A stretch of DNA of 64,000 bases, taken from NCBI GenBank assembly GCA_002269645.1, contig NIVC01001462.1:1-64000 (forward strand), in the 5' to 3' direction. Shown one piece after another: positions 10,996 through 55,402 of this stretch; position 1 is the first letter of the stretch, and each line of letters starts with the position of its first letter. This DNA is from Macrostomum lignano (lineage: Eukaryota). The notes under the pieces are model-generated. The model had not been told where the DNA came from, did not search any database, and was given only the letters and a program-made list of their open reading frames with translations. A program made the translations under genes and the position numbers.

Positions 10996-22061
<11,066 letters not shown>

Positions 22062-22494
22062 TTGACAGCTTGCAATAAATTGAAATCAACTGCGTTTCTG
22101 GCGCCAATAATATTCGAAGACAGACAAGATATTAGCGTATTCAGACACCCTTCCTGTTTCTGTTTGCTGTGTCTAAACCTGCGGTACCTGGGGTTATCAG
22201 CTGATAATTCTGCAGTCAAGAATTAATATATCATTAATGACAACTGACCAAACGATATTTAACAAAACTTTCTGAATGGTAGAAGAAAAATCTATGCCAA
22301 TTCAATAACTACCTAGGAATAAAATATATTGGCACTAACCTTGAATTGTTAGGCACACTGCGATTGTTTTCTTCTGTTCTGTTTACCATGCTCAATTAAT
22401 AAAACACGGATACCTACACGGACTGATATTGTGGATTGAAAAAAATTTACTTCATTAGTTAATTTGCTAATCTTGAAAATAATATTCATAATCC

Positions 22495-23150
22495 TCCACC
22501 CCAATCTTCAACACCCACCATCCCAATTTCATCGCCCAGCACCCCAATCTTCAGCACCCACCACCCCAATTTCAACACCCACCACCCCAATTTCAACACC
22601 TACCACCCCAATTTCAACACCCACCACCACAGTTTTCAACACCAACCACCCCAATCTTCAGCACCAGCCACCCCAATTTCAACACCCACCACCCCAATTT
22701 CAACACCCACCACCACAGTTTTCAACACCAACCACCCCAATCTTCAGCACCAACCACCCCAATTTCAACACCCACCACCCCAATTTCAACACCCACCACC
22801 CCAATTTCAACACCAACCACCCCAATTCAACACCAACCACCCCAATTTCAACACCCACCACCACAGTTTTCAACACCAACCACCCCAATCTTCAGCACCA
22901 ACCACCCCAATTTCAACACCCACCACCCCAATTTCAACACCAACCACCCCAATTTCAACACCCACCACCACAATTTTCAACACCAACCACCCCAATCTTC
23001 AACACCCACCACCCCAATTTCATCGCCCAGCACCCCAAAATTCAACACCCACCACCCCAATTTCATCGCCCAGCACCCCAATCTTCAGCACCCACCACCC
23101 CAATTTCAACACCCACCACCCCAATGTCTAGCACCCACCACCACAATCTT
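22495..23150. repeat. 21-bp C/A-rich minisatellite (CCACCCCAATTTCAACACCCA)n between IARS1 and EMC4
   Basis: Seen directly. Confidence 0.92.
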
Positions 23151-25165: not shown

Positions 25166-26160
25166 ATATTCAATCTACGTTGGGTAACTTAAATTTAGTA
25201 GGGACCTAAATAAGATAACTGGGAACTTAAAGTATTTTTAGGAGGGCGGGGACCCTGCGCTGATTTTTTAGAGTTGTTATTATCTGGTTTTTGGCAGCAA
25301 ATTGAAGAATGGATAATTCAAGTATTCAGTAAGTAGTGAATGAAAGTAGCATGTTGGGAAGTTTTGGAGATAAAATAACCTTGTTAATTTTGCGACTTCT
25401 TTATTGGGGATAATGCAGATAAAATGATTTGGATTATGGAGGAAGTGAAAAAAATTGTTCTGAAAGTGATTGTTTAGCGGCGGTAACGTAAAATCGCTCC
25501 CCGCGGTATCTACTGCCGATAGTCTACAACTCGTGCATGTACGATCGAAGGCTTCTTCTAAAAATCTTCGTCGAAAAATGCGCACGTCGTTATAAGATAA
25601 GCCTATGTCCGGCTTGCCAACAAATATTATGCCGTCGAAATTTACAAAGTCTAAAATTCTCATCGGCTGAAGTTTCGGCGCAGCTGATGCTAAAAATGGC
25701 ATGGCCATCTAAATATAAACATGATTCGTGTTCCCTCTTACGTGAGTAATAAAATTGTAACTGCTTTCCATCCCGTACATTCATGCTGGATGACCAGCAG
25801 GGGTGGGGGTAGCCTTTCTCTTCCCTTTTGGGCGAGAAAATTTCCTTCCCGCGGGCCAGCCCTACTGGCCCGCGTATCCACCCCATATATCCCTTCCTTG
25901 CCTACTCCACTGCAACTGTACAGTCCTTGGTACAATACTATAATTTGGTAAGTACAAGTTGATCGTAGGCAAAATAGAACTTTCTGGTGCCCTCATTCAT
26001 ACCCTCCTTTCACCTCAGAGCAATGGGAGCGCACAAGTCTCATTTTCGACAATGAGGCAGTACCTTCAGCTGTCATATAATATATTCGCTCGTAAAGGAG
26101 GCAAACGCTATGATTTTTTCCTCAGCCAACAAGGAACTAAAACTTGAACGCCAAGTATCC

Positions 26161-29100
26161 ATGACTAGCCTGAACTCGTTAGACCAGCTAGAGTGCCACT
26201 TCACCTGGAAGCCAGATGATAACTGCACAAAATCTAACATCGATGACGTGATCGAAAAGACGGAGAACAAGATAAAACGGGAGCCTCACAAAAAGGCCGC
26301 CTACCTGGCAACCCTGGCGTACCTGTGCACTCGCAAGCGAATCAAAAAGTTCGACTTGGCCAAGCAATATCTCACTGAAGCGCTGGAAATTGATGCACAA
26401 ATACAGCATGACAGTCAGGAAGACTTCACGGTATCAAGCGAGTTCGTAATCAGGGCCGACATGCTGCACCTCAAGCAGCTGAGCAAAGGAAAAAGTCGGC
26501 CACTAACACCGGACGAAATCGAGACAGAAATGCAGAGACTGGAAGAGCTCTGGACTGACCCGAGTAGCAAGGCTCGAGCGTTTGCAGCGAAGGGAGTCAC
26601 CTTCGGTTGCTTCGGTCCAATGAAATACGCCATTGGCGTCAGTGCCTTCGCCGAGGCGTCAAGTATCCTATTGGAGCACAGCAAGGGGTGCAACTTCTAC
26701 TGGCTCTATGGTGAAGCTTATTTAAGAGCTCGTTGCGACAGACAGACGGTGAATAAACCCGCTGACGAAGCTCAGTTGGACTTGTGGAGAAGAGCCGAAG
26801 GCATCGGTGAGAAGAAAGGTCTCACGACGGCCACATTCTACGCAAACTATGTTGAAGCCATTCTGCACAACGAGGATTCCAGTCTGTGCCAAAGCTTGGT
26901 TGAAAAGGCTGCCAATCTTCTATTGGAAATGGCTGAGGAAAAGAAAGAGCTGTCGAAAGTCGCGTACCTTATTTGCCTTAAAGTGTTTCGGTGTCTAAAA
27001 TCTAGTTCAAACAATTTAGAAGTCATCAGAAATCGACTGTTTGAAGACGCTAAAGAAGTGGCAAGCGTATTTGTTGATCCTGGATTCTTCCTTGAGCTTT
27101 CCAAAGAAGCTCTAAGCTCCGATAATAGAGATGAGGCGATTCGGTTGCTTAAAGAGGGCAAGGCAAAGGCAGGTGAGCCTGGTCACATCTGGATTGAGTT
27201 GAAACTCATAGAGCTTCAGCGAGAACAATGGAACAAAGACACAGTCGTAGACGCATACGACTCTCTGAGAGAAACTTTCTCAGTCTACAACAAAAATTTC
27301 GCCACAGTAGAGTTTCACAAGGCCATGTTCCTAATGAAGATTGGCGAAACAAAGGAGGCTGTAGAATCGTGCGTTGCTGCCTTTGACACTGAGGAAACAT
27401 TGGACCATATATGGCCCAACGAGAAGGAAACATTTCTTCGACAACTGAATGAGAGGCATGAAGGCTTTGAAGAGTACCTGGCTTGGTACGCCGACAACAT
27501 CGGGACATTCAAAGTTCAGCTGGATGTCTTAGGCCTCTACAGGACGGCTCTGAGGCGAGACGACAAAAACAATTTTGCTCTAGAGCATCTGGGTTGCTAT
27601 TTTATGAAGAATGGCGAATTTTCTGAGGCCTCTGCAAGTTTTCGGAAACTGTCCAGTGATCACAAAAACAAGCAGGCACTGGTGGCCGAGTCGCTACTCA
27701 GAGACCCCGGCTCCGATTTGATGAAGCTGATGGAGTGTCTTGAATGCGGCTGTTGCGATGCTGCTCCTCGAATTCTTGACATCATTGAGCGTAAAAAGTC
27801 CAATCAGCGAACTGCCGTAAGGGTGATGGCGGATGAGTCAAGTCCAACTCAAGCTAGAAGCGACCCGATGTTCTTCCGCCGAGAGTTGTACGAGCTGTGC
27901 GCTAAGATCGAACTGACTCTGGATGATCCCAGCAGCTTCTCTATTAAAACTGAATCGGATTCGGGCCATTTTGAGTCTGTAAAGTTCAGAATCGCCGAGT
28001 TCTTGGAGCTCAATCAGCTAACGAGCAAAGCGAGCTCGACTCGGTCAGCTGAAGGCGCCGGCGATCGCGGAAACCTCATGAGATCGAATCGATTCCGACT
28101 GACGAAGCTGCAGACGAAGGAGACTGGAAGGGAAGTTCAAGAAATGAACAACATGACCGTCTCGGTGCTGAAGGAGGCAAAGGAGGTCCTCGATCGATCT
28201 CTGGCAGTTCGGCTTAAGGGATCGAGTCGAGAGTTCTCATACCCTCACGCGTTTGGCCAGTTGAAGAAGCAGCTAGAAGGCAACTATAAAAAGCAGTTTA
28301 ACCAGCGGAGTTCCGAAGCAGAGCGGAAGGCATTCGAGCTTGATTCACTGATGAGGGTGCTCAAGGAAAACAGAGATGCTGCATCGCTTGAAAACGTGCG
28401 AAAATGTCTGCTAGAAGAACTGAAACACAAACGTATTGATCCGAACTTTCACCAATCGGGAGACACCAGAGACATCTACAACTTCATGGTGAGTCGTGAG
28501 CACAGAATCCTGTCAAGTGAGGACAGCTGGATTGTCCGCTGGATCTATCTGGTTAACAACGAGAAGCACTCGACTGAGATTCTGGTGGAAGAGCTCAATC
28601 AGCAGCTGAAGTCTGATTGGTCGGGAGGCGCAGAGTGCCAAAGGACGGCGTACGACGTGGCGCATCTGGCAGCGGAGTTCGCTGAGGAGACATGGGCCGT
28701 CTTTTCTGATGGAGTCCGAGCTGGTGAGGCTACTGGAGTCCGAGCTGGTGAGGCTACTGGAGCCCGAGCTGGTGAGGCTACTGGAGTCCGAGCTGGTGAG
28801 GCTACTGGAGTTCGAGCTGATGAGGCTGCTGGAGTCCGAGCTGATGAGGCTGCTGGAGCCCGAGCTGGTGAGGCTACTGGAGCCCGAGCTGGTGAGGCTA
28901 CTGGAGTCCGAGCTGATGAGGCTGCTGGAGTCCGAGCTGATGAGGCTGCTGGAGCCCGAGCTGGTGAGGCTACTGGAGTCCGAGCTGATGAGGCTACTGG
29001 AGCCCGAGCTGGTGAGGCTGCTGGAGCCCGAGCTGGTGAGGCTACTGGAGTCCGAGCTGGTGAGGCTACTGGAGTCCGAGCTGATGAGGCTGCTGGAGTC

Positions 29101-29448
29101 CGAGCTGATGAGGCTGCTGGAGTCCGAGCTGATGAGGCTGCTGGAGCCCGAGCTGGTGAGGCTACTGGAGTCCGAGCTGATGAGGCTACTGGAGTCCGAG
29201 CTGATGAGGCTGCTGGAGTCCGAGCTGATGAGGCTGCTGGAGTTGGAGTCCGAGCTGATGAGGCTGCTGGAGTCCGAGCTGATGAGGCTACTGGAGTCCG
29301 AGCTGGTGAGGCTACTGGAGCCCGAGCTGGTGAGGCTACTGGAGTCCGAGCTAATGAGGCTGCTGAAGTCCGAGCTGATGAGGCTGCTGGAGTCCGAGCT
29401 GATGAGGCTACTGGCCTGGTTCATACCAAAAATATAATCGTTAAGTAA
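26161..29448 (+). CDS. IFIT-like tetratricopeptide-repeat protein with C-terminal helical (possibly HEPN-like) domain and GVRA[G/D]EA[T/A] repeat tail, 1095 aa
   Basis: N-terminus SLDQLECHFTW matches the IFIT hallmark (IFIT5 LELECHFTW). YLATLAYL resembles LYNLLAYV, and AAKGVTFGCFGPMKYAIGVSAFAEA resembles CEKGWALLKFGGKYYQKAKAAFEKA. Probable 5'UTR intron 25948-26125. ATG 26161 taken as the start. Confidence 0.82.
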   Translation: MTSLNSLDQLECHFTWKPDDNCTKSNIDDVIEKTENKIKREPHKKAAYLATLAYLCTRKRIKKFDLAKQYLTEALEIDAQIQHDSQEDFTVSSEFVIRADMLHLKQLSKGKSRPLTPDEIETEMQRLEELWTDPSSKARAFAAKGVTFGCFGPMKYAIGVSAFAEASSILLEHSKGCNFYWLYGEAYLRARCDRQTVNKPADEAQLDLWRRAEGIGEKKGLTTATFYANYVEAILHNEDSSLCQSLVEKAANLLLEMAEEKKELSKVAYLICLKVFRCLKSSSNNLEVIRNRLFEDAKEVASVFVDPGFFLELSKEALSSDNRDEAIRLLKEGKAKAGEPGHIWIELKLIELQREQWNKDTVVDAYDSLRETFSVYNKNFATVEFHKAMFLMKIGETKEAVESCVAAFDTEETLDHIWPNEKETFLRQLNERHEGFEEYLAWYADNIGTFKVQLDVLGLYRTALRRDDKNNFALEHLGCYFMKNGEFSEASASFRKLSSDHKNKQALVAESLLRDPGSDLMKLMECLECGCCDAAPRILDIIERKKSNQRTAVRVMADESSPTQARSDPMFFRRELYELCAKIELTLDDPSSFSIKTESDSGHFESVKFRIAEFLELNQLTSKASSTRSAEGAGDRGNLMRSNRFRLTKLQTKETGREVQEMNNMTVSVLKEAKEVLDRSLAVRLKGSSREFSYPHAFGQLKKQLEGNYKKQFNQRSSEAERKAFELDSLMRVLKENRDAASLENVRKCLLEELKHKRIDPNFHQSGDTRDIYNFMVSREHRILSSEDSWIVRWIYLVNNEKHSTEILVEELNQQLKSDWSGGAECQRTAYDVAHLAAEFAEETWAVFSDGVRAGEATGVRAGEATGARAGEATGVRAGEATGVRADEAAGVRADEAAGARAGEATGARAGEATGVRADEAAGVRADEAAGARAGEATGVRADEATGARAGEAAGARAGEATGVRAGEATGVRADEAAGVRADEAAGVRADEAAGARAGEATGVRADEATGVRADEAAGVRADEAAGVGVRADEAAGVRADEATGVRAGEATGARAGEATGVRANEAAEVRADEAAGVRADEATGLVHTKNIIVK
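28709..29413. repeat. 24-bp tandem repeat (GGAGTCCGAGCTGGTGAGGCTACT)n inside the IFIT-like ORF
   Basis: About 29 units encoding an 8-aa repeat. Confidence 0.95.
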
Positions 29449-29784
29449 AATGAGACAAGCACCCACCCGGTAAGACTATTGATAATTGTTTTGATATGCT
29501 TTGTATTGAATTACTTCTTTTTTGTAGGTTTCTTGTGTCAAGGAATAGTTTAGAGATAATTTGCTGTGTACGCCAGTGTATATAATCTTCAAGCAAAATC
29601 GAACCTTTGTACCGTAAAAGTACATCAGACTCGCATTCTATGGGAATTTATTTGAGAACCTTACTGTCATTAGCGAGACACCCAATACAAAAAGGCAGAA
29701 TTCTAACCAATTAATGTGCGTCTATAATGTACATTAATGTACATTTTGCCGATAACTATATATCAGCTTTATTTGATCCTGCAG

Positions 29785-30072
29785 AATGACCCCTGGGTGC
29801 GGTGCAGCAAACGAAGAAGCAGTGCAGTACGCAAGCCTGCGTTGCCAGCTACTTTTAATTGGCCTGCGTTGATTTTCGGTCTGATATTATTTGTAATGTG
29901 TGTCATAAGGATTAAAGGATTAAACAGAAATTGGTCTAATTCTGCCAGCCGTCGTCCATACTATCATCATGATGATGATAGTTCAACTGATATTTCTTCT
30001 GCTAATAATGATGATGATGATGATGATGGTGGTGATGATGGCTCAATCACTGATAATACCGATTCTGACTAA
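29785..30072 (+). other. Putative terminal exon (transmembrane helix + poly-Asp), paralogous to the ends of the PARP-like exon at 34490
   Basis: Acceptor TATCAGCT...CTGCAG|AAT resembles TATCAGCT...ATGCAG|GAT at 34489. LIFGLILFVM aligns with LIVDLVLDIM. The ending ATACCGATTCTGACTAAG resembles ATACCAATTCTGACTAAG near 35250. Confidence 0.55.
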
Positions 30073-30679
30073 GATCAGGCAAACTTATGTTTTCTTAAAC
30101 AGATTTTTGTATATTTACATGCGCATGTAGTTTATAATTACTATATATCTAAGAATATTGAATATTGAAGTTGAAAATTCATTTTTGTTTATTATTATTT
30201 TTTAGAGATCAAATATGGCCCTGTTGTAAACTTTTTATAAAATAGGTTTTTCGATATTGCTGGTTCTTATTTGACAAATTCTCAATAGCTATATTATTTT
30301 CATTTGCCTGAACATGTGTATTTACATACAATAGGACAATATTCTTGATCAACAGAAAAGTTGACAATGTAAAGATTAAAAAAATTCCAATACTTTTGCT
30401 TAGTTTTGCAACCACAGGAAACTGTGTGGCTAGTTTTGTTTTAACTATGCTCTTGTTAATGGCGATTGAACTTACGTTGGTTTTCTATATACAGTAGTTT
30501 CGTCTCTTATATCTACATGGTGACATTTATACTTACCGCAACCATAATGCAACGATTAGCTTCTCCTTGCATGTTTTTGTAATTAAGTCGGCAGACTCCG
30601 ACCCGCGAAGCCTCCCTATCCGGCCCTTGGGTCCTTTGAAACTTCACCATTATAGCGATTCAGCCCGCTCAATATTTGT

Positions 30680-30912
30680 GTCTCTTCTCTCCTCTCCCAT
30701 CCCCTCTCCCTCCACTCCCCTCTCTCTTCACTTCATTCTCCCCTCTCTCATCCCTCTCTCCTCTCTCCTCTCTCCCCTCTATCTCTCCTCTCCTTCTCCC
30801 CCTCTCTCATCTTCCCCTCTCTCTTCTCTCCCTTCTCTCGTCTCCCCCCTCTTTTCTAATCTTGTCTTGTTTCTTATCTCTTCTATTCCCTCTCCTTTCC
30901 TCTCTCTCATCT
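30680..30912. repeat. CT-rich low-complexity tract
   Basis: Seen directly. Confidence 0.9.
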
Positions 30913-31354
30913 GGCCCGTAGCCCTGAGCTGGACTCATCACCCAACCCTTGAGGTAAAAAAGTTTGCCGACCCCTGGGCTATATCAAAATGAAGCTTATG
31001 TATATAACTATTTTATACAGTATACTCCTATATATTGTATCTGTTAAAAAAAGGCATGTAATCGTAAAATATATAAAGGAATTGAGGTAAGAAAATTTTA
31101 TAGCTTGTGGACAAGCGTTTGGCTCGCGGTTTAGGGCTACTTGTTCTATCATGGCTTATTAGTGGATTATAACTGGTCTGAGTTTTGGTAGATTGCTGCC
31201 ATCAGGTTCCCGATATTCCCTAATCCTTAGTATGTATTATTTAAAGAATTGAGTCAGGACACCAATGTAATAATTTAAGTTTAACACAATTTTAATAGAA
31301 AAAACGAAAAAGATCAGTTTTACAAAAGTTGTTCTTATATTAACTCAATTTTCT

Positions 31355-31738
31355 GTATCAGATTAAACATGCCTTTTTCGGGAGTTATTTTCATAAATCC
31401 CTCGGGCCTGATTATAAACCATAGACATAAAGACTTTACGGAATATTATTGATTATTACCAAATAAAATCCCGGAGAACGCAAATATTGTCACGGAAAGA
31501 CTTTATTTCTATGGATTATGTATCAGATTAAACATGCCTTTTGAGGGAGTTATTTGTATAAATCACGAGGGCCTGAGGCCCGAGGGATTTATGAAAATAA
31601 CTCCCGAAAAAGGCATGTGTAATCTCGTATAAACCATAGACATAAAGACTTTACGGGATATTTTTGAATATTACCAAATAAAATCCCGGAGAACGCAAAT
31701 ATTGTCACGGAAAGTCTTTATTTCTATGGATTATAAGT
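31355..31738. mobile_element. Composite of two short palindromic MITE-like elements, tandemly duplicated
   Basis: Direct repeat starting GTATCAGATTAAACATGCC at 31355 and 31520. Each unit carries an element with ends TATAAACCATAGACATAAAGACTTT ... AAAGTCTTTATTTCTATGGATTAT. A hairpin centred on GAGGGCCTGAGGCCCGAG spans about 31525-31625. Confidence 0.7.
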
Positions 31739-32044
31739 GCTTTGGGCACGACTCCCAGTTTTAGGGGCAAGTCTTATCCCGTTTCCTGAGTCTTATTTCA
31801 CCTTATTCCCCTTACCTTAATGTTGGGTGTGGCCATAGACGACTCAGTCGCACACACACCCAGCCATGAGCTAAAGAAGCAATGCTTCAAGCTTGGAAAT
31901 AAAAAAAGGAAAAGTTATGATAACATGAAATAAGACGCTCTGCTAAGAGTGCAACTTTTAAGTTGACCTTGTTGATCTTGACTCAGTGTCTTCCGCTAGA
32001 GAAGAAGTCATAACATTTAATTTCCTAAATTTTCTAAGGTTGAA

Positions 32045-33130
32045 ATGCGAGCGCGGCGAGCACTCAAGGCTATACTTTTCTCAAATGTCAGAGTCAAATT
32101 CATAAGAACTGATACCTCTTACCTCTTCGGAGGTGACTGTAAAAAGCAGTTTAACCAGCTGAGTCCCGAGGCAGAGCGGAAGGCATTCGAGCTTGAGTCA
32201 CTACTGATGAGGCTGCTCAAGGAAAACAAAGATGCTGCATCGCTTGAAAACGTGCGAAAATGCCTGCTAGCTGGAGCCCGAGCTGATGAGGCTACTGGAG
32301 CCCGAGCTGGTGAGGCTACTGAAGTCCGAGCTGGTGAGGCTACTGGAGTCCGAGCTGGTGAGGCTACTGAAGTCCGAGCTGGTGAGGCTGCTGGAGTCCG
32401 AGCTGGTGAGGCTACTGGAGTCCGAGCTGGTGAGGCTGCTGGAGTCCGAGCTGGTGAGGCTGCTGGAGTCCGAGCTGATGAGGCTACTGGAGTCCGAGCT
32501 TGTGAGGCTACTGAAGTCCGAGCTGGTGAGGCTGCTGGAGTCCGAGCTGATGAGGCTAATGGAGTCCGAGCTGGTGAGGCTACTGAAGTCCGAGCTGGTG
32601 AGGCTGCTGGAGTCCGAGCTGGTGAGGCTACTGAAGTCCGAGCTGGTGAGGCTGCTGGAGTCCGAGCTGATGAGGCTAATGGAGTCCGAGCTGGTGAGGC
32701 TACTGAAGTCCGAGCTGGTGCGGCTGCTGGAGTCCGAGCTGGTGAGGCTACTGGAGTCCGAGCTGGTGAGGCTACTGGAGTCCGAGCTGGTGAGGCTACT
32801 GAAGTCCGAGCTGGTGAGGCTGCTGGAGTCCGAGCTGGTGAGGCTGCTGGAGTCCGAGCTGGTGAGGCTGCTGGAGTCCGAGCTGGTGAGGCTGCTGGAG
32901 TCCGAGCTGGTGAGGCTGCTGGAGTCCGAGCTGGTGAGGCTGCTGGAGTCCGAGCTGGTGAGGCTACTGGAGTCCGAGCTGGTGAGGCTGCTGAAGTCCG
33001 AGCTGGTGACGGTGAGGCTGCTGAAGTCCGAGCTGGTGAGGCTGCTGGAGTCCGAGCTGGTGAGGCTACTGGAGTCCGAGCTGGTGAGGCTGCTGAGCCC
33101 GAGCTGGCTCACGGGGAGGGGAATATCTGA
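32045..33130 (+). pseudogene. Partial duplicate of the IFIT-like gene 3' region (short C-terminal segment joined directly to the 24-bp repeat)
   Basis: About 32128-32270 matches 28275-28415 (KKQFNQ...AERKAFEL...KENKDAASLENVRKCLL), then jumps into the repeat (32271-33095). About 300 bp present in copy 1 is missing. Confidence 0.75.
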
Positions 33131-33988
33131 GATTTAAAGTCTTACGGGGGATTGCTGAAATGTAATTAAAGGCTACATAAGTTCAGAAGCTACATGTAGT
33201 AAATTATACAAAAAAATCTGTATTCATTTTTTGTTGGCTCCCCAACGGAAGGAGCTGCATGATTGCTAGTATTAATACTGAATTATTTGTTTCTATAAGA
33301 GCAAACCATCGCTTATTAGATTTGTTGTCCACTATATAGCTCTCTTCCACTGCAAGACTATCAGTGACATTGCACTTTGCTTTTTTTCAAGCGTAACATT
33401 TGGATACAATTACCTGATTGAATTATGAGAAAGAAAAAATGTGCCTGCCTATTAAAAATGACAGCGAAGTTGTTCTTGCTTAACTTTGTTAACTTGTTCT
33501 GTCTCTGCATGATTTCTGCGCTCTGCGATTAAAAGTGTCAGAACTTCGCAGGCACATCAGATTTGATAATGTAGCTGTCGGCTTGTTAGTGCACGGGCAC
33601 TGGACATGCGTCGCCGACTGGGAGGGTTGCTTGTTACCGCGTGCATGCTGGGGTGGATGCACCGTTCTAACCCAAATATTTCGGTGTGCGACAATTGAGG
33701 TGGGCTCACGCTTTTGTTTAGTAGAGAAACTCATTCTCAACCACGCGCTCTTACAATACAATACAAGTATGTACGCTGAGTACACAGTTAAACATAGCAT
33801 TCTGTGTAATGTAGCTAGAGGTGAAATTAGGAGTGCAAGCTAAAAATAGAATCTGAGACTGACACAAGTTTAATAAAAACAGTTAAAGTGAAAAGAGAGT
33901 ATAATTTTATCAAATCAGATGAAAACCTAAACAAGCCTGTACTCACAGTCTAAGCTCGTATTCTACGACGTAACATACCTGCCTAGAA

Positions 33989-35221
33989 ATGGGCAACCAT
34001 GTCGCCATACCGGATCCTGCATATGATACATGTACCCTTCCGGTAAGATCCTAGCTGATTAGTTTCTATGTTTTGTGTACGCTCGTAGAATTTCTTCTGT
34101 TAGGTTTCGTGTCAAAGAATACTTCAAAGTGATTTGTTACTTCTGCTCTTTTCATTGTACAGAGTGTATAAGAGCTACATGCAATAGCCTGCGCAATTGA
34201 GACCTTAACAAGTGACAGTGGCACCTCCAAGAGACAGTGGCACCTCCAAGAGACAGTGGCACCCTCCAAGATACAGTGGCGCCCTTCAAGATACAGTGGC
34301 ACCCTCCAAGAGACAGCGGCACCCTCCAAGATACAGTGGCACCCTCCAAGATACAGTGGCACCCTCCAAGAGACAGTGGCACCCTCCAAGAGACAGTGGC
34401 ACCCTCCAAGATACAGTGGTACCCTCCAAGAGACAGTGGCGGCCTGCAACAAAAGACAATTATCAGCTAAACTGACCCTAATCATGCAGGATGCGCCCGG
34501 TGTCTCTCGGACCTTTCTTCCAAACGATGACGAAGACATGACGAATGAGTACTCAACAGTGCTAAAGAAAGTGGGAAAGCCAATTCGAGATAAAATCCAT
34601 TCGGTGGCGAGAATAGACAATAATGAGCTGGACCGCAGGCTCGCAGCCTCTAAAAATCGAGAGATGCCTGAGACTGACAGCCGGTCAACGCTGCTGAGCT
34701 TCTACACAACAAAACAAAACGCTGAAGCAATCATACAGAACGGCTTCACGGTCGATCAGTATAGCAAGGGCCCGTTCGGTCACGGGATCTACTTTGTATC
34801 CAATGACTACAAGATTAACGAAATAAAGGCCTGCAACAATGGACTCCGCTGCCAGCTGGTGTGTGAGGTGGCTCTGGGCAAGCCGAAGGTCTGCGACATC
34901 CCCAACCGGTCGCTCGACTCTGCCAAGTTGAAAGCCATGGGCTGCGACTCTGTGCTGTCTGGACAAAATAAGAAAAAGCAAAGCGCCAACGCCATCGACA
35001 GAGACGATGAGTACACGTACGTTGTGTACCGTGCTGAGCAGGTGTCGCCCAGGTATTTGGTGACGTTCAGGTCAAGTAGATCCACAGGCGTGATGCTCGA
35101 CAAAGCAGTGCAGTGCGAAGGAGTAGCGACAAGTCTTCCAGGCCTGATTACATTGATTGTGGATCTGGTATTGGACATAATGAGGTCATTCCGTAAGCGT
35201 AAAAAGACTAAACGCAGTTGA
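33989..35221 (+). CDS. PARP-type ADP-ribosyltransferase-like protein, degenerate catalytic site, hydrophobic/basic tail; 2 exons
   Basis: Exon 1 33989-34042 (MGNHVAIPDPAYDTCTLP, CCG|GTAAGA) and exon 2 34490-35221 (CAG|GAT), both phase 0. GPFGHGIYF, LVCEVALGK and YVVYRAEQVSPRYLVTF are PARP catalytic-fold motifs. The HG motif is replaced by FY. Confidence 0.75.
34215..34442. repeat. 20-bp minisatellite (ACCCTCCAAGATACAGTGGC)n in the PARP-like intron
   Basis: About 11 copies. Confidence 0.92.
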
Positions 35222-35458
35222 TGATGATCGTCTCTACAAATTACTGGCGATACCAATTCTGACTAAGAAGGCAACTCTGTCACTAACAGATTTTCGTATG
35301 TAGTTCCCATATCCTTCGTTATGACAGCCAACCTGTGCCGATCGAAATAAAAGGTATTTCGTTACTAATGTAGTAAACAAACACCCTTTTTTACAGAAAT
35401 CTATTAAGGCAGTTTTAAACTCTATATAAACCCGTAAGTTTTCTGTCGATATTCCTGC

Positions 35459-36600: not shown

Positions 36601-37357
<757 letters not shown>

Positions 37358-41828: not shown

Positions 41829-44483
41829 TCACAGAATCGAGCACTCTGACCCAAACTTGATTAGATATCTCGGGGTGGCTTGCTCCGCTCTGTACACGAT
41901 GTACTCGTCATTCAACACTCCTCCTTTTTTCTTCGAATTTCTTCTGGCAAACACGGAATCGTATCCAGCTGTTCTAACCTGCTCTAAGGTAAGACTGGTC
42001 TTTGGAGCATCGCACACCATTGTTTTACCCAGCAAGACATCGCAGAGCAGCAGCGATTTAATACCTGTTCCCCTGCAATACTGAGCGCTCTTGGTGCTAT
42101 CGGTTGCGAAGTATATGCCAGCACCGAACATTCCGCTATTGCCAACCTTGAATCCATTCTGAATGATCATTTCAGCATTTTTTCTTGTAGTTCCGTGGAA
42201 AAGCAACTCCGGCACACAGTCCTTCTTGTGCATTTCGTTGTATACATTGAAAAGTTTCTTATCCAAGACTGGATTTTTTATTTTCTCAATGGAACGAATT
42301 TCCAACTTAATATTGTGCTCCTTTAATGCGTATCGCAGAACTCGGTCGCTTATCTTATAGTACTCGACCGCAGTGTCTTCATTGTCAGCAGTGACTGGTG
42401 TACGTCTGATTCTGTCACCATCCTGACAAAGTTTGTTTGCCTGCACCTGGCTGGCCAGAGGCCAACAGCTGGAACAGAACTGGTCACTTATTCGACGCAA
42501 AGATGATTCGCGGTCGAGCCGTTCGGTGTGCCCGCAGCGAAACGTTCTTAACTCGTCGTTCTAAAAATGAATTGTTGGCAACTGCAAATCCTTTCAAATT
42601 GAGCATGCGCTCGTATCTTTTATTAACAAATCCCTTTGGAAAATGTTTACAGATCACCTTACCCACAGGTGCACAGCCATGTCCTGAAGACTGTTAAACT
42701 CTTCAATCAAGATGCCTAACTGGTCCTTGACATCCGTGCGTAAAACTGAATTTCCTCGATTTTCCTCTATCAGTTTGTAACCCAGTGTGCGGACATTTTC
42801 CACTGTCCACGATCTGCTATCGATCTCTTTGCGTAGCTTTTGAAGGATCCTTTGTCTACGAACCTCCTTATGCTCTGGTGAAGGCTGAGAATCGTCTATC
42901 TGACAGTGTCTTGTCATGTTGTAATGAAGGGCAGATATCCAGCATCGACAGTCGCGAAATTTCTGCCAATACTGCTGCAGAAGTGATTGATCAGGGGTGC
43001 ATAGCTTTGCGGGACCAATTGACGCTGCTTCGGCCAATTGATTGTAACCAGCGCCCTGCAGACAGTTTCGTGAATGCTTGAATGCAAAAACTCTGTCCAG
43101 TTAAAATAATAGCAATAAAAATATATCAGCTGGTCAGCCCCATAAGAGAAGACAGCGAGAGACAAGCGGTCAGAATTCCAACGATAGAGATTAGATAATC
43201 CTGAGATTAAGCTAACCCGCCACCAACAATCCATGAGAACTAGCTAAACAAACCAGCTCTTTCGAAATCGGATTTCCGACTTGAAATGGCACTGGACTTA
43301 CCTGCCAACAAGTGTTTTTGATATTCAATCTCGAATTCGTAGCCAATAAAAGGGACACTGCTGAGACTGGATCGCATTGACATGCAGGAAGCGAGAACTT
43401 TTGTAGGGGAGGGCGCTTTTATGCTGACAAGCCTCTATACACAGCTGAGTGTACATACTATTACATTCTACTGAATTCAAGGAAGTTCAGGAACTATTCG
43501 GAAACCCAGGTAGTCCAAAAGTGTTGAGAGGCTCCGGAAGACCTGGTATGATATTGCCTCTGCTTAGGTCTGCGGGCACCCTCCATACGAGGGCCCACCT
43601 TGCTTCCTAAGATCCCAGCTTTTGTCAGCAGACGTATTTTCGAAGCGTCCGAAAGTGTACCGAAATCATGGGGCCACCCATCCTGCTCGTCAATAGAACC
43701 CACTTTCGCACTGGCAGAAGCTCCCTGCGGCCAAATTCTGGGGTTGAGAATACCAAACTAGAGACCTGTCTTATTATACAGCTAGCATACAGCCTTTCCC
43801 GGTCCGCTGTTACCTATTCTCGTAGTGAGCTACCTCAAGACAAATTTTCCAGCGGTCAGAGACAGACTTCGGAAAGTATGCAGACCGGATCACCATTGCG
43901 GGTAAGTGCTCAACCGTGATATTCGCTAGTAGGATATGAAGACAAACAAGTCATGGTAATGCATTTATGCTATATTAACAAAATTAAAACTACTCACCAT
44001 TTTTTGTTGAACAACCTCGTTCAAGTCGGACATTTTTTGGCCGATGTCACGAATTTGCTTTCTGATTTCCGCGCACAAATCTTTGTTCCCGAAATTTTCT
44101 TCCGCGAGCTTACCTCCCATTGACTGAACTTTAATTACTAGACTTTGCCTTTTTTTAAGCTCGTGCATAAGTTTCATTTGTTGCTCCTGCGTCTCCAGGG
44201 GAATCGACTGGTCCAAAACACCGGACAGGGTCCGCTCAATCCAGCATTGGCTATCATGTAGAAAGTCAAAAAACGAATGCTGGTCCGGTTCCGACTGAAG
44301 CTCTTCAACTAATTTGGCCAGCTTGAAAACTGATTCCAACATATTGTTCCTTCTCCGCCGTGGTTGGCTAGGTCCTTCGCTAAATCGTCTGCGACGCAAC
44401 GATCCACCTCTGTCTCGTTGGAAGTTCGAATGCGGGCTGCTCAATTGCAGCCCTCTGGTGCTATGGAACTCGCACGGTCTACG
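41829..44483 (-). CDS. PARP-type ADP-ribosyltransferase with intact H-Y-E triad and two N-terminal spectrin-like repeats; 3+ exons
   Basis: Exons 44483-43998 (TTTGTAG|CGT ... ATG|GTGAGT), 43055-42663 (CTGCAG|GGC ... TGG|GTAAGG) and 42560-41829 (TTTTTAG|AAC), all phase 0. LFHGT, FGAGIYFA and DEYIVY motifs present. The start is uncertain: ATG 44342 or an upstream exon. Confidence 0.75.
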
Positions 44484-46739: not shown

Positions 46740-47380
46740 AGACGAAAGCCAGTTTGGGTGTTGTCCATGGGGAGGTTCGGTGCTGCCGACTTCCTGTGGA
46801 TGAACGACAGTGCGCTGAAGCTTACATGTATTTGCTTGCTCCTGGCGGCTTGCTCCTGAAGCCTCGCTCCTAGAGGAAGGAAGGCGGTGAACTTCTACGG
46901 TCGTCCAACTTATGGGGACGGCCACCGCTACTTCGGCACTTCGGAGTTTTTGGCCTCGACGATGACCTCCTCGCCTTCCTGTCAACAATTAACTGTTATT
47001 AAGGCGCCCAGCGCCAGATCAATAGGCTGGTCTTGTGGTCAACACACTTAATACCGAGGTTCTCACCGTGTCGGCTGATTTCCCAGAGTACCTGTACGGT
47101 ATACATGTATGCCTCAGCGCAGAAGACCATGCGCTCGCCCGCTGCCAGCGGTTCACCTACCTTGGCGGTCTGGTGCTCCACATAGAGGAGGACATCTGGC
47201 GGCGCATAGGACTCGCCTGGGCGGCCTACTGATCTACCCACCGTCCTTCTCAGTCCCAACCTCTACAGGACGTCCCGCTATTCACCTTGCAGGGTATATT
47301 TAAATGGGGCCAAGCGGGATTCAGTCTATGTGTGGGCAGCCTGCTTTGAGATACCGGGACGCCCGATTCAACGTTCTCGC
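46740..47380 (+). mobile_element. Degenerate RTE-clade LINE fragment
   Basis: DDDLLAFLST...GAQRQINRLV, RCQRFTYLGGLV...RRIGLAWAA and QDVPLFTLQG align with the RTE ORF at 62630-63490. The left boundary is approximate. Confidence 0.75.
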
Positions 47381-47384
47381 CAAC

Positions 47385-49600
47385 GTCATGTCCTGGATTG
47401 CCTTCACTTTGGCTGGGTCCGGCTTGAGCTGATCTCCTTCCAATAAGTAGCCTAGAAACTTGATCGAAGTCTTGCGGAATTCACTTTTTGCCGTGTTGAT
47501 CTTCAATCCTTGCTGGTTTAGTCGATGCAATACTTCCGTCTCACGAACTGCCAATTGTTCTACGCCTTTGCCGCATATCAATATGTCGTCTACGTAGGCA
47601 ATGACGCCAGGAATTCCTTGTAGGACTTGGCTAATGTACCGCTGGAAGATCGCAGGTGCTGTTTTCACTCCGAACGGAAGCTTGTTGAAAGCGAACATCC
47701 CAAATGGTGTTGAAATTACTGTCAGCTCTTTGGAAGCTTCATCTAGTGGGATCTGGTGATAAGCTTTCTCTAGGTCCAGACGAGTGTATATCCGGCTGCC
47801 AGCAGCAGTTGCAATCACTTCGTCAGGTGCAGGCATCGGATATGAATCGTTGATAAGATGAGAATTGATTGTCACCTTGTAGTCGACGCAAAGTCTGAGC
47901 TTTCCAGAAGGTTTCTTGACCACGACAATTGGTGAGGCCCATTCACTGAACTTGACGGGCTTGATGGTGTCTTCTTCAAGCAACCGATCGATTTCATCCT
48001 TGACTCCCTGTCTGAGTGCGAAGGGTAGCGGCCTGGGTTTGCAATGAATTGGAGTGGTTCCTTCCTTGATCTTAAGAGTTACTGGTGGAAATTCGCATGA
48101 CTGGGTTGCCGATGTGCAGCTGTTGTCTACAGCGTTTAGCGTGAAATTGAGCTTGTCTTGGCCAACCAGAACAAAGTTCCTCTGCGATTCCACAATGAAG
48201 AATGTGATTGGAATGAACTCGTCATTGTACTCCAACTCAGTGTCGTGTGTTCCAAAGACCTTCATCTGCGTATCAGCGTATGTTGTCAGAACAGTGTCTG
48301 TAGGTGTCAGCTTTGGACAACCCAATCGTTTCCAGATCGTTTTTGACATTACCGAAACTCCTGCCCCAGTATCGATTTGTGCGTTCACGCTAAGCATCGA
48401 CCCGCTCGTGTGTCTGAGCCTAACAGGCACGGTGTAGCTATCAACGGGATGTCGAATGTGAAAACAATCCTCCTGTTCAGCTTCGCTTGCATCTACAAAG
48501 CTTGTGGTCCTTGGCCACACTGCAGCTCGCCTAAATTGACCAGATGCTGACGGGCTTTTGAACGATTTTCGGCCTTTGCCAAAACCAGTTGATTTCGTTT
48601 TGCAAACTGTTGCGAAGTGGTTTTGCATGCCACATTTGTTGCACGTTTTTCCTTTCGCAGGACACCCTCCATTGGAGCCATGCATTGTGCCACATCTGCC
48701 ACACTTGGAGCTTGTAGAGTGGGAGCCTCTGGCCACCGATGCTGAAATTTTCATTACTTCAGAAGACTGCGGCTGACTGGTGCAACCCTTTAGTATTTGC
48801 GTTTGTGATAGGTTCTGGTGCGCCTCAGCGATGTTGATAGCTGTCTCAAACGTGAGAGTGCTGAAGTCCTGTTCCAATAACTTGCTGATGGCCACCTTGT
48901 CATTCAAACCGAATACGAGCTGATCTCTCAGTCTCTCATCTCTGGATAGGCCAAACTGACGCTTGTCTGCCTGCATGCAGAGTTGCTGTGCATACTCACG
49001 AATGCTCATTGATGCCGTGCGAGTGATATGCTGGAAATTGAATCTCTCAGCCATGACGAACGTCTTTGGTTCCAGGATGCTGGCCAGTAGTTTGGTCAGT
49101 TCATCGAAGCTCTTTTCTCCCGGCTTCTTGGGAGCGGCTCGATCTGCCAATGCGTCGTACAGCTTGGTGCTGAGCTTCATCAGCAGCAGCTTGTTTTTCG
49201 TGTCGTCCTGCCAGCCGTTGAGTTCGCTGCACAGTGTGAATCGGTCCAACCACCTCTGGAAGTTCGAACTTTCATCGAGTTTTTCGATGTCAACTTGCTG
49301 TCCTCTCGATACTTGTGCGCTTGGGTTCTGCGCTGTCGCTGTTGCCGACTTTGTCGCTTGGACTGATTTCGACGAGATAGCAAGCGGTGGTGCTTTGTCG
49401 CTCGAAACCGTTCTACCAACTCCTTTAGTTGGCGATGCTGGCGTACTTCCAGGCAATTTCGTAGCCTATGCTTGCCGACGCCACTGTTGTGCTTTTGGCT
49501 TTAGCCTTTAGCAATTAGCGGTCTGTTGACCTCTGACGCGTCTATCATTTATTTCATAACTCAATAGCATGGTTCAATTCATCAACGCAGTCGCGTAACA
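47385..49600 (-). mobile_element. Ty3/Gypsy (Mag-like) LTR retrotransposon, 3'-truncated: 5' LTR, PBS, gag-protease-RT
   Basis: 116-bp LTR 49600-49485 (TGTT...AACA) and PBS TGGCGTCGGC from 49483. Single ORF with two Cys/His knuckles (CGRC...H...CPAKGKTCNKC...HF..VC), protease IDTGA and RT YVDDILI. No RNase H, integrase or 3' LTR; no ATG at the ORF start. Confidence 0.9.
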
Positions 49601-54400: not shown

Positions 54401-55402
54401 TCACTGTCCGATGCCCCTCCAAAAAGCCGGGATCGTCACGAGACAGACGATCACCAGAAAGGGTTGAATGATCCAACCGATACTCAATAGCCAATCCAGT
54501 AAGAAAATAAATATAAGTCCTATAGCTGCTGCACAAGCCAGGACAAAGATGAAGATAAGCCAACAAAGTTCTGATTTAAAAATATCTAGAATCCTCTCTC
54601 GAACGTTTTCCAGCTTCAGAGCGACAAAAACTGCAAATGGCACGGACAGCACCGCCATAAGCAAAAACCTCACAGCCGCGTAGAAATGGTCACTCAGTCG
54701 GCCAAAATCATTATTCGTCACTTCAAACGTCACCAGGTACCTTGGAGTGGCCTGCTCGTGTCGGTAAACAACGCATGTGCCGAAGCCGGCAAGGCTGTTG
54801 TTTGCTAGCACCGAGTCGCAGCCCTCGTCTTGAATCTTCGAGAGGTTGAGCCCCGGATCGGGCTGGTCGCAGAGTTTCTCTTTGCCCAGGAGCACTTCGC
54901 CCACCAGAAGTGTCTGGACGCCACTCTGAGTGCTGTAGCTGGGTCGCTTGCTGTTGTTCTCAGTTGAGAAGTAAATTCCCCAACCGTAGGGACCTTCAGT
55001 TGCGGTGAAACCTTCATTGAAGACTTTCTCTCTGTTATTCAGGCTGGCATCGTGAATGAGCAACCGTGGCTCCGAGTCGACAAGCAGGAGTTCGCGAGCC
55101 GCGTGAAATCGGGCATCGAGCACTGGCTGCTCGATTCGCTCGATGCTTTTGATCAAAATGGATTTCAGTGGATTTAGAGGCCTCGCGTACAAGTACAGAG
55201 TGACCAGTTCGCTGACGGTTGCGTACTCTGTGGCGGTCTCCGGCTCGTCTTTTAATAGCGGCTTTCGATTGACGGCACTAAAATAAGGCTTTGAAGTCCG
55301 TGCTGTACATGTCGAACTTGTTGAACATGTTGAACGTGTTGTATCCGTTGTTTTCACCGACTTCGCCGTCAGAGATTTCCGCCATTTTTTGAGCTGTTTC
55401 AT
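54401..55402 (-). CDS. PARP-type ADP-ribosyltransferase-like protein, degenerate (catalytic Glu absent), C-terminal multi-pass membrane anchor
   Basis: LLIHDA, GPYGWGIYF, LLVGEVLLGK and CVVYRHEQATPRYLVTF motifs, followed by about 3 hydrophobic helices. ATG 55402 is in frame; the true start is uncertain. Confidence 0.78.
   Translation of the reverse strand: MKQLKKWRKSLTAKSVKTTDTTRSTCSTSSTCTARTSKPYFSAVNRKPLLKDEPETATEYATVSELVTLYLYARPLNPLKSILIKSIERIEQPVLDARFHAARELLLVDSEPRLLIHDASLNNREKVFNEGFTATEGPYGWGIYFSTENNSKRPSYSTQSGVQTLLVGEVLLGKEKLCDQPDPGLNLSKIQDEGCDSVLANNSLAGFGTCVVYRHEQATPRYLVTFEVTNNDFGRLSDHFYAAVRFLLMAVLSVPFAVFVALKLENVRERILDIFKSELCWLIFIFVLACAAAIGLIFIFLLDWLLSIGWIIQPFLVIVCLVTIPAFWRGIGQ

What the first reader, a model, noticed from the sequence alone, without database searches (positions are those of the whole stretch)
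29446..30072. IFIT-like ORF stops 21 nt before a strong in-phase donor leading to a TM exon homologous to the PARP exon
After TAA (29446-48) the frame continues NETSTHP to CCG|GTAAGA (29470, phase 0). The phase-0 acceptor at 29785 opens NDPW...WPALIFGLILFVMCVIRIK...poly-D. The PARP-like gene downstream has the same donor (CCG|GTAAGA, 34043), a similar acceptor (TATCAGCT...GCAG), an aligned LIVDLVLDIM helix and the same final TTCTGACTAAG. Inference: the two units derive from one ancestral gene, TPR(IFIT)-repeat-[PARP]-membrane tail. Unit 1 lost the PARP core; unit 2 lost most TPRs.
Basis: partly seen in the sequence, partly recalled or inferred. Interest (0 to 1): 0.8.

Follow-up and report, generated by a model that had tools for sequence, protein, structure and literature searches.

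The report
Deletion-fused remnant of a neighbouring gene
In this flatworm (Macrostomum lignano) locus a 1.37 kb deletion removed the start of a small neighbouring gene and pushed its splice donor up against the stop codon of an IFIT-like gene, so the layout is a relic of duplication and decay, not a hidden IFIT-PARP fusion gene.

Summary
TAA sits at 29446-48, seven open codons follow, CCG|GTAAGA has its GT at 29470, the acceptor is at 29785, and a 95-codon exon with a hydrophobic helix and an acidic tail follows. This exon and its intron are homologous to the downstream PARP gene.

The interpretation of one ancestral TPR-repeat-PARP-membrane gene is not supported. The window is M. lignano contig NIVC01001462.1. 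The PARP gene (33989-34042 + 34490-35221, 261 aa) is an annotated, RNA-based, stand-alone two-exon gene with its own start, MGN.

A third copy of the locus (L004) keeps 1,370 nt between the IFIT-like stop and the donor. That segment holds the IFIT-like 3'UTR, an intergenic region homologous to the one upstream of the PARP gene, and an 18-codon first exon (MGNKASKKMTACTASTHP). The window and L003 lost this segment by deletion, which happened to be in frame (1 in 3 by chance).

The TAA is the native stop, present in four copies and paralogues. None of 44 family representatives carries a PARP domain. Unit 1 did lose its PARP core.

The "IFIT-like" label holds (IFIT5, E=4e-8; top Foldseek hit). 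This is ordinary duplication and degeneration, of low interest.

The parts
26110..29448 (+). IFIT-like single-exon ORF (1112 aa), ending in its native stop TAA at 29446-48. It is not annotated in the GenBank record.
   Evidence: ORF list. 62%, 53% and 81% identical to the M. lignano proteins Mlig031348g1, Mlig030191g2 and Mlig006963g3. Family profile hits IFIT5 at E=4e-8, including the LECHFTW motif. Foldseek top hits are IFIT5. TAA is conserved in L003, L004 and L001.
28710..29414 (+). 24-nt tandem array, 29 copies, coding GVRA(G/D)EA(T/A) at the C-terminus of the ORF.
   Evidence: Tandem Repeats Finder.
29456..29459 (.). Junction of a 1,370-nt deletion relative to copy L004, with CAA microhomology. 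The deletion removed the ORF's 3'UTR and its ATTAAA/AATAAA signals, the intergenic DNA, and the first 40-43 nt of exon 1 of the neighbouring gene.
   Evidence: L004 4314-4712 aligns to window 33598-33997 (E=1e-23).
29459..29469 (+). Last 11 nt (..S T H P) of exon 1 of the neighbouring 'tail' gene. In L004 the full exon 1 reads MGNKASKKMTACTASTHP.
29470..29784 (+). Intron (GTAAGA...TGCAG). Its 5' part is homologous to the PARP-gene intron.
   Evidence: z=15.
29785..30072 (+). Exon 2 of the PARP-less duplicate. It has a hydrophobic helix at about 29866-29922 (ALIFGLILFVMCVIRIKGL), an acidic tail, and TAA at 30070-72. In this copy it has no start codon or promoter of its own.
   Evidence: No protein match anywhere.
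32131..33130 (+). Unit 2 fragment of the IFIT-like ORF: aa ~724-768 at 92% identity, then a 24-nt array at 32266-33107. It sits inside an unannotated 361-aa ORF (32045-33130).
33598..33988 (+). Region upstream of the PARP gene. It is the counterpart of the segment deleted in unit 1 of the window.
   Evidence: (67% identity over 430 nt with L004 4314-4712).
33989..34042 (+). PARP gene exon 1 (MGNHVAIPDPAYDTCTLP), with donor CCG|GTAAGA.
   Evidence: Annotated protein P0005 = BOX15_Mlig006965g1 matches the spliced model exactly.
34043..34489 (+). PARP gene intron, containing a 20-nt tandem array at 34209-34440.
34490..35221 (+). PARP gene exon 2: PARP catalytic-type domain, then the hydrophobic helix VATSLPGLITLIVDLVLDI, a basic end, and TGA at 35219-21.
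   Evidence: Pfam PF00644 E=1.4e-10. Closest solved structure is tankyrase-2, E=3e-6, with the catalytic His absent. Kyte-Doolittle mean 1.88.
35219..35266 (+). In-frame relic of the ancestral acidic C-terminus behind the stop: TGA TGA TGA ... ITGDTNSD TAA, matching unit 1's ...ITDNTDSD TAA.
41829..44342 (-). Neighbouring annotated PARP gene (489 aa). It has canonical H-Y-E motifs and no hydrophobic tail.
54401..55402 (-). Third PARP-domain ORF, followed by several hydrophobic segments.

Best explanation
The locus is a tandem duplication of a two-gene segment, followed by decay.

The ancestral segment held (a) the 3' part of a single-exon IFIT-like gene that ends in a 24-nt repeat array and a TAA, and (b) about 1.3 kb downstream, a separate two-exon gene. 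Exon 1 of that gene has 18 codons starting MGN. Exon 2 has a PARP domain, a hydrophobic helix and an acidic tail.

Copy 2 (33989-35221) is still an expressed, annotated PARP-like gene. Copy 1 lost its PARP core by an internal deletion. In the lineage of the window and L003, a further 1,370-nt deletion with CAA microhomology removed the IFIT-like gene's 3'UTR and poly(A) signals, the intergenic region or promoter, and the ATG-bearing part of exon 1. That deletion placed the orphan donor 21 nt behind the IFIT-like TAA, in frame by chance.

Shown: the homologies, the deletion and its direction, the conserved stop, and the separate start exon.

Inferred: in this copy the membrane exon is not translated. 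If the IFIT-like ORF is transcribed, the RNA most likely runs on, splices 29469 to 29785 as a 3'UTR intron, and ends downstream of 30072.
For: - Window = NIVC01001462.1. L005 is identical to window 23989-45221.
- The PARP gene is annotated as a 261-aa two-exon protein identical to the model 33989-34042 + 34490-35221. The annotation is RNA-seq based (PMC5730564).
- L004 carries AAGTAAAATGAGACAA, then 1,370 nt, then ...ctgcctagaaATGGGAAAC...GCAAGCACCCACCCG|GTAAGA.
- That extra DNA aligns to the region upstream of the window's PARP gene (E=1e-23).
- Its first ~40 nt match the post-stop sequence of the old paralogue L001. The long form is therefore ancestral.
- The window and L003 share the identical junction.
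- PARP paralogues at 35-38% identity align from residue 1 of exon 2. The PARP exon therefore predates the unit duplication, and unit 1 lost it.
- Differences in the tail exon between copies are 4 of 4 nonsynonymous.
- The tail peptide matches no protein in 5.8 billion.
- 0 of 44 family representatives have a PARP domain.
- There is no AATAAA or ATTAAA between the TAA and the tail exon. The first lies at 30375.
Against: - No RNA data could be examined here, so use of the 29469/29785 junction and expression of the ORF in this copy are untested.
- The ORF is intact over 1112 codons in two copies, which leaves room for function. pN/pS between the window and L003 is about 1 on only 33 differences, which is not decisive.
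- Unit 1 and unit 2 are 92% identical in the ORF fragment and arrays but only about 67-70% identical in intron and intergenic DNA. This points to gene conversion or a more complex history than a single duplication.
Confidence: 0.85

Rival explanations
1. One gene encodes or once encoded TPR(IFIT)-repeat-[PARP]-membrane tail. The TAA is then a recent nonsense mutation, or it is bypassed by read-through or splicing, so that the membrane exon is the gene's true last exon.
For: The frame is open and in phase from the TAA to the donor, and the acceptor is phase 0. The two units are homologous.
Against: - The TAA is present in the window, L003, L004 and the 62% paralogue L001.
- L004 shows a separate ATG exon and 1.34 kb of spacer.
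- The PARP gene has its own start and is annotated from RNA as 261 aa.
- No PARP domain in 44 family representatives.
- Three other paralogues (L001, L002, L006) end at their own stop with no PARP or tail homology within 10 kb; two distant relatives (L007, L008) are single-ORF genes with no PARP nearby.
- TAA followed by A is, from general knowledge, a poor read-through context.
- Donors inside the repeat (G|GTGAGG) are phase 1 and would give GAA TGA at the acceptor (read from the sequence).
Confidence: 0.03
2. The tail exon is an independent small gene in this copy. It would use the in-frame ATG at 29737 inside the 'intron' (ORF 29737-30072, 111 aa) and encode a small membrane protein.
For: An ATG-initiated 111-aa ORF exists. 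The exon reading frame is intact in all three copies.
Against: - The 48 nt upstream of 29785 form an AT-rich polypyrimidine/acceptor context that is homologous in position to the PARP-gene intron.
- In L004 the same exon is preceded by a proper MGN exon 1.
- No annotated gene and no protein match.
- All four between-copy differences are nonsynonymous.
Confidence: 0.05
3. Operon-type linkage. The IFIT-like gene and the MGN/PARP gene are co-transcribed as one transcriptional unit and separated by spliced-leader trans-splicing at the conserved ctgcctAG|AAATGGG, 3 nt upstream of both MGN start codons. There would then be one primary transcript but two proteins.
For: About 15% of M. lignano genes are assigned to operons and 30-39% are trans-spliced (PMC8629364; PMC5730564). 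An AG preceded by a pyrimidine-rich stretch is conserved before both ATGs. Both genes are on the same strand, 0.86-1.34 kb apart.
Against: - The site is TAG, not the enriched [T/C]TNCAG motif.
- The spacing is at or above the 1 kb operon threshold.
- The adjacency is not seen at five other family loci.
- It does not explain the window's unit 1, where this site is deleted.
Confidence: 0.12
4. Assembly artefact. The 21-nt spacing would come from a collapsed or mis-joined assembly of a repeat-rich polyploid genome.
For: The assembly is highly redundant and repeat-rich (PMC5730564).
Against: Two independently assembled contigs (the window and L003) have the identical junction and are 99.5% identical over 4.4 kb around it. 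The junction lies in unique sequence outside the tandem array.
Confidence: 0.03

Closest known systems
Vertebrate IFIT proteins (human IFIT5, IFIT1)
   Same: N-terminal L-x-x-L-E-C-H-F-T-W motif. Colinear TPR matches over about 350 residues: profile vs IFIT5 E=4e-8 and vs IFIT1 E=8e-4. IFIT5 is the top Foldseek hit among all PDB TPR proteins (E=9e-8, TM 0.47-0.51 normalised on IFIT5). The family is multicopy, clustered and fast-diverging.
   Different: About 14% identity. An extra ~300-residue non-IFIT C-terminal half plus a tandem-repeat tail. The organism has no known interferon system. RNA-binding pocket residues were not verified. The structural model has only moderate confidence (pLDDT 68).
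PARP catalytic-domain proteins: tankyrase-type sequence, PARP16-type tail-anchored layout, and PARP13/PARP9-type degenerate triads (the last two comparisons rest on general knowledge)
   Same: Pfam PARP above the gathering score. Best solved relatives are tankyrase-1 and -2. A C-terminal hydrophobic helix followed by a short basic end resembles a tail anchor.
   Different: There is no His at the NAD-binding position (LLSFYTT where the neighbouring paralogue has LLFHGTT). The Glu aligns to Thr. It is therefore probably not an active ADP-ribosyltransferase. It has no ankyrin/SAM or other accessory domains. Its first exon starts MGN, a possible myristoylation motif.
Duplication-degeneration with deletion-generated gene juxtaposition (tandem duplicates decaying into pseudogene fragments or chimeric transcripts)
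   Same: Tandem duplicates with complementary losses. A microhomology-flanked deletion joins the end of one gene to the donor of the next. The different homeologous copies carry different lesions: L004 lost aa ~29-845 of the IFIT-like ORF, while the window and L003 lost the tail gene's 5' end.
   Different: Here the upstream stop codon is retained, so no fusion protein is predicted. Whether a chimeric mRNA exists is unknown.

Membership tests
PARP catalytic domain (PF00644), for the unit-2 gene | Significant match to the family profile above the curated cut-off | tested here: met
   41.4 bits against a cut-off of 26.7, E=1.4e-10, covering profile positions 6-198 of 199. Tankyrase-2 E=3e-6.
Catalytically active PARP / mono-ART | H-Y-E or H-Y-hydrophobic triad, with His in the ...FHG(S/T) motif | tested here: not met
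   The motif reads LLSFYTT, with no His in the region. Tyr in GHGIYF is present. The Glu position aligns to Thr in the HMMER alignment, although a 2-residue indel makes this position ambiguous.
IFIT family, for the ORF 26110-29448 | N-terminal CHFTW motif and colinear similarity to IFIT TPR subdomains | tested here: met
   Family profile vs IFIT5 E=4e-8 with three colinear stretches, and vs IFIT1 E=8e-4. Foldseek ranks 1-3 are IFIT5.
IFIT family, for the ORF 26110-29448 | Orthology by phylogeny, virus or interferon inducibility, and 5'-PPP or cap0 RNA binding | not tested
   No tree against other TPR families, no expression data and no binding data were available. A 2013 survey found no invertebrate IFITs (PMC3688568).
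   Conserved TAA. Separate ATG exons. 0 of 44 family representatives have PF00644. No PARP within 10 kb of five other family loci.
Tail-anchored membrane protein, for the unit-2 PARP product | Single hydrophobic segment within about 30 residues of the C-terminus and no signal peptide | tested here: inconclusive
   The best 19-residue window is residues 230-248 of 261, Kyte-Doolittle mean 1.88, but it contains two Asp. No dedicated TM predictor or localisation data were used.

The most novel reading that the evidence does not exclude
The deletion may have made a nascent chimeric gene in two of the three homeologous copies. The IFIT-like ORF lost its own 3'UTR and poly(A) signals. It would now borrow the neighbour's intron and last exon as its 3' end. 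It is then a single substitution (TAA to a sense codon), or rare read-through, away from an IFIT-like protein with a C-terminal membrane anchor and acidic tail.
Probability: 0.05. Interest if true: 0.5.

Novelty: new member of a known kind. Interest (0 to 1): 0.2.

Why it matters
For the finding as given, it matters little. It is a clear example of tandem duplication followed by complementary decay in a polyploid genome. It also shows that an in-phase donor behind a stop codon need not indicate a hidden exon.

It is useful for annotation. The 1112-aa IFIT-like ORF is missing from the GenBank annotation of this contig and of L003. The 29785-30072 exon should be marked as a gene remnant.

The side result may matter more. 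A Macrostomum-centred family carries the IFIT N-terminal signature and has IFIT5 as its best structural match, and this member sits in a cluster of PARP-domain genes. If confirmed by phylogeny and by induction experiments, it would bear on whether IFIT-type proteins predate vertebrates.

Tried and rejected
- blastn of unit 1 against unit 2 at word size 7 missed the intron homology. It was recovered by Smith-Waterman alignment with shuffles.
- The protein-level match of the two helices is not significant alone.
- The search with the reconstructed tail-gene peptide in the 5.8-billion-protein set found nothing. No annotated paralogue or transcript-derived protein was therefore available to test the junction.
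- The exact look-up of the 1112-aa product found no gene call anywhere.
- Single-sequence PDB search with the ORF gave only designed TPRs. The family profile was needed to see IFIT5.
- Alternative donors that could skip the TAA were checked by eye. Repeat-internal G|GTGAGG is phase 1 and gives GAA TGA. AA|GTAAAA at 29445 is phase 2 and gives a 28-codon out-of-frame end. Neither yields the membrane frame.
- Two literature searches for invertebrate IFIT-like genes returned nothing beyond the 2013 vertebrate-only survey.
- Downstream regions of paralogues L001, L002 and L006 and of distant relatives L007 and L008 showed no tail or PARP homology.
Full report
**What the window is**

The window is a eukaryotic sequence from the flatworm Macrostomum lignano. 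Locus L005, fetched through the annotated PARP protein, is base-for-base identical to window 23989-45221. It lies at positions 23989-45221 of GenBank contig NIVC01001462.1, so window coordinates equal contig coordinates.

The GenBank annotation of this stretch lists three genes:
- an EMC4 gene ending at 24375;
- a 261-aa PARP gene at 33989-35221;
- a 489-aa PARP gene on the minus strand at 41829-44342.

That annotation was built purely from RNA-seq assemblies and TransDecoder (PMC5730564). Neither the 1112-aa ORF nor the 29785-30072 exon is annotated.

**Check of the observation**

- TAA is at 29446-48.
- AAT GAG ACA AGC ACC CAC CCG follows, then GTAAGA with GT at 29470.
- The acceptor tgcag|AAT is at 29785.
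- A 95-codon open frame runs to TAA at 30070-72.

Downstream:
- CCG|GTAAGA has its GT at 34043.
- The acceptor cag|GAT is at 34490.
- The shared TTCTGACTAAG is at 30063 and 35257.

The downstream exon is a PARP domain (PF00644, 41.4 bits against a cut-off of 26.7).

Homology between the two units is well above chance for most of the region.

| Segment | Unit 1 | Unit 2 | Result |
|---|---|---|---|
| Donor plus 5' intron | 29450-29563 | 34023-34136 | z=15, 0/500 shuffles |
| 3' end including the start of the 3'UTR | 30030-30112 | 35219-35299 | z=14, 0/500 |
| Block just upstream of the helix | 29817-29835 | 35103-35120 | 18/19 identical, 4/1000 |
| ORF fragment | 28283-28414 | 32136-32270 | 92% identity |
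| 24-nt arrays | 28710-29414 | 32266-33107 | ~91% identity |

The acceptor region and the 10-residue helix match are not significant on their own. Both are colinear with the significant blocks. The units are duplicates.

**The decisive evidence: two further copies of the locus**

M. lignano DV1 has a highly redundant assembly (PMC5730564). The PARP protein cluster has three members, g1, g2 and g3, on three contigs.

L003 (g3) is 99.5% identical to the window over 26433-30852. It has the same TAA, 21 nt and donor layout.

L004 (g2) differs. After AAGTAAAATGAGACAA it carries 1,370 additional nucleotides before GCACCCACCCG|GTAAGA.

The last 54 nt of that stretch read ATG GGA AAC AAG GCT TCC AAA AAG ATG ACT GCA TGT ACC GCA AGC ACC CAC CCG, which translates to MGNKASKKMTACTASTHP. 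This is an 18-codon, phase-0 first exon. It is the same length as the first exon of the PARP gene (MGNHVAIPDPAYDTCTLP) and is preceded by the same ctgcctagaaATGGG context.

Further upstream, L004 4314-4712 aligns to window 33598-33997, the region upstream of the PARP gene (67% identity over 430 nt, E=1e-23).

At its 5' end, the extra DNA continues the post-stop sequence that the old paralogue L001 also has...GAGACA..TCGTT.TTA.AATACAGAGA. The window and L003 diverge immediately after GAGACAAG.

The long form is therefore ancestral. The window and L003 carry a derived 1,370-nt deletion with CAA microhomology at 29456-29458. It removed:
- the IFIT-like gene's 3'UTR, including ATTAAA and AATAAA;
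- the intergenic or promoter DNA;
- all but the last 11-14 nt of exon 1 of a separate downstream gene.

The reading frames happen to coincide, which is a 1-in-3 outcome.

**The TAA is the native stop**

The TAA is present in the window, L003, L004 and the 62%-identical paralogue L001.

The other family members examined are single-exon genes or single ORFs that end at their own stop:
- L001, annotated as 921 aa;
- L006 (Mlig006963g3), 81% identical, 877 aa;
- L007 and L008, from environmental assemblies.

None of them has PARP or tail homology within 10 kb downstream.

An exhaustive HMMER search of 1.84 billion representatives with the ORF found only 44 clusters. A Pfam scan of all 44 found no PARP domain, one caspase domain and one RRM.

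**The PARP gene is independent**

The annotated protein P0005 is exactly 33989-34042 spliced to 34490-35221.

**Direction of change in unit 1**

The tail exon matches the PARP exon at its start position and from about 35103 to the end. It lacks the ~600 nt of PARP domain in between.

PARP paralogues in the same window are only 35-38% identical yet align from residue 1 of exon 2 (42422-41838 and 55276-54725, minus strand). One of them is also followed by hydrophobic segments.

Several signs of decay are visible.
- The block AAGCAGTGCAGT is read in different frames in the two units (read from the sequence).
- All between-copy differences in the tail exon are nonsynonymous: N to K in L003, and G to D, D to N and G to D in L004.
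- Neither the intact L004 tail gene nor the window exon is annotated, and neither matches any protein.

In unit 2 the ancestral acidic C-terminus is cut off by TGA TGA TGA. The in-frame relic ...ITGDTNSD TAA is still visible behind it.

**What the parts are**

*The ORF.* The ORF is genuinely IFIT-like.
- A profile of 11 family members hits human IFIT5 at E=4e-8, with three colinear stretches that include LddlECHFkW against LLELECHFTW. It hits IFIT1 at E=8e-4.
- An AlphaFold model of residues 1-620 (pLDDT 68, three-sequence alignment) has IFIT5 as Foldseek ranks 1-3, at E=9e-8.
- pN/pS between the window and L003 copies is about 1.0, from 7 synonymous and 26 nonsynonymous differences.
- In L004 the ORF has lost residues ~29-845, yet the remnant is annotated as a 228-aa protein. 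The promoter is therefore active at least there.

*The PARP-like product.*
- It lacks the NAD-binding His: LLSFYTT where the neighbouring paralogue has LLFHGTT.
- Its catalytic Glu aligns to Thr. It is probably a pseudo-enzyme.
- pN/pS among the three copies is 0.4-0.7 on few changes.

**Mechanism, with status**

Shown:
- the duplication of a two-gene segment;
- the loss of the PARP core in copy 1;
- the 1.37-kb deletion in the window and L003 lineage;
- the conserved stop.

Inferred:
- The membrane exon is untranslated in this copy.
- If the ORF is transcribed, the RNA lacks its own poly(A) signals. No AATAAA or ATTAAA lies before 30375.
- Such an RNA would probably splice 29469 to 29785 as a 3'UTR intron.

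A fusion protein would need read-through of TAA-A, which is unlikely.

An operon-type co-transcription of the IFIT-like gene and the MGN genes, with trans-splicing at ctgcctAG|AAATGGG, is possible for unit 2 and L004. It is untested, and the site does not fit the enriched motif.

**Verdict**

The two units are duplicates, unit 1 did lose its PARP core, and the ORF is IFIT-like. The proposed ancestral single gene is not supported. This is ordinary duplication and degeneration, and the striking stop-to-donor geometry was produced by a deletion. Interest is low for the finding itself. The IFIT-like family in a flatworm is the more noteworthy by-product.

Noticed in passing
window 26110-27900 (also L001, L002, L006, L007, L008): A small family of 44 clusters at 50% identity, from M. 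lignano plus unnamed ENA assemblies. Its members are single-exon proteins with the IFIT N-terminal LECHFTW signature and have IFIT5 as their best sequence-profile and structural match. The only survey found in the held literature reports IFITs as restricted to jawed vertebrates (PMC3688568).
   Followed up: partly
window 26110-29448 and L003 1651-5019: An intact 1112-aa (window) or ~1120-aa (L003) IFIT-like ORF is absent from the GenBank annotation of both contigs. The internally deleted remnant in L004 (2582-3268, 228 aa) is annotated.
   Followed up: partly
window 34490-35221: The annotated PARP-like protein lacks the catalytic His, and its Glu aligns to Thr, so it is likely a pseudo-enzyme. 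It starts MGN, a possible N-myristoylation motif, and ends in a hydrophobic helix with two Asp.
   Followed up: partly
window 41829-44342 (-), 54401-55402 (-): Two more PARP-domain genes make this a PARP cluster. One has canonical H-Y-E motifs and no membrane segment. The other appears to be a single-exon ORF with several C-terminal hydrophobic segments.
   Followed up: partly
window 31340-31774: A composite MITE-like element with nested inverted repeats (70-nt arms, 86% complementary) and direct repeats. It is 96-98% identical to copies in another contig (L002 6016-6230).
   Followed up: partly
window 19600-22100, 22460-23150, 30680-30900, 34209-34440, 36615-37345: Large tandem or low-complexity arrays. 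One is ~2.3 kb and open in several frames ([13 protein letters not shown]...). There is also a proline-rich array, a CT-rich tract, a 20-nt array inside the PARP intron, and a 0.7-kb CTGT-type array.
   Followed up: no
window 2183-3094, 5979-7268, 12963-16737, 47321-49456, 62630-63490: Other content of the window: two C2H2 zinc-finger ORFs, exons of a class I aminoacyl-tRNA synthetase, and LTR-retrotransposon protease and reverse-transcriptase ORFs.
   Followed up: partly
window 28283-29414 vs 32131-33107 compared with 29470-29563 vs 34043-34136: The duplicated ORF fragment and arrays are ~91-92% identical between units. The duplicated intron and intergenic DNA are only ~67-70% identical. This suggests gene conversion of the coding and array part, or a two-step history.
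   Followed up: no
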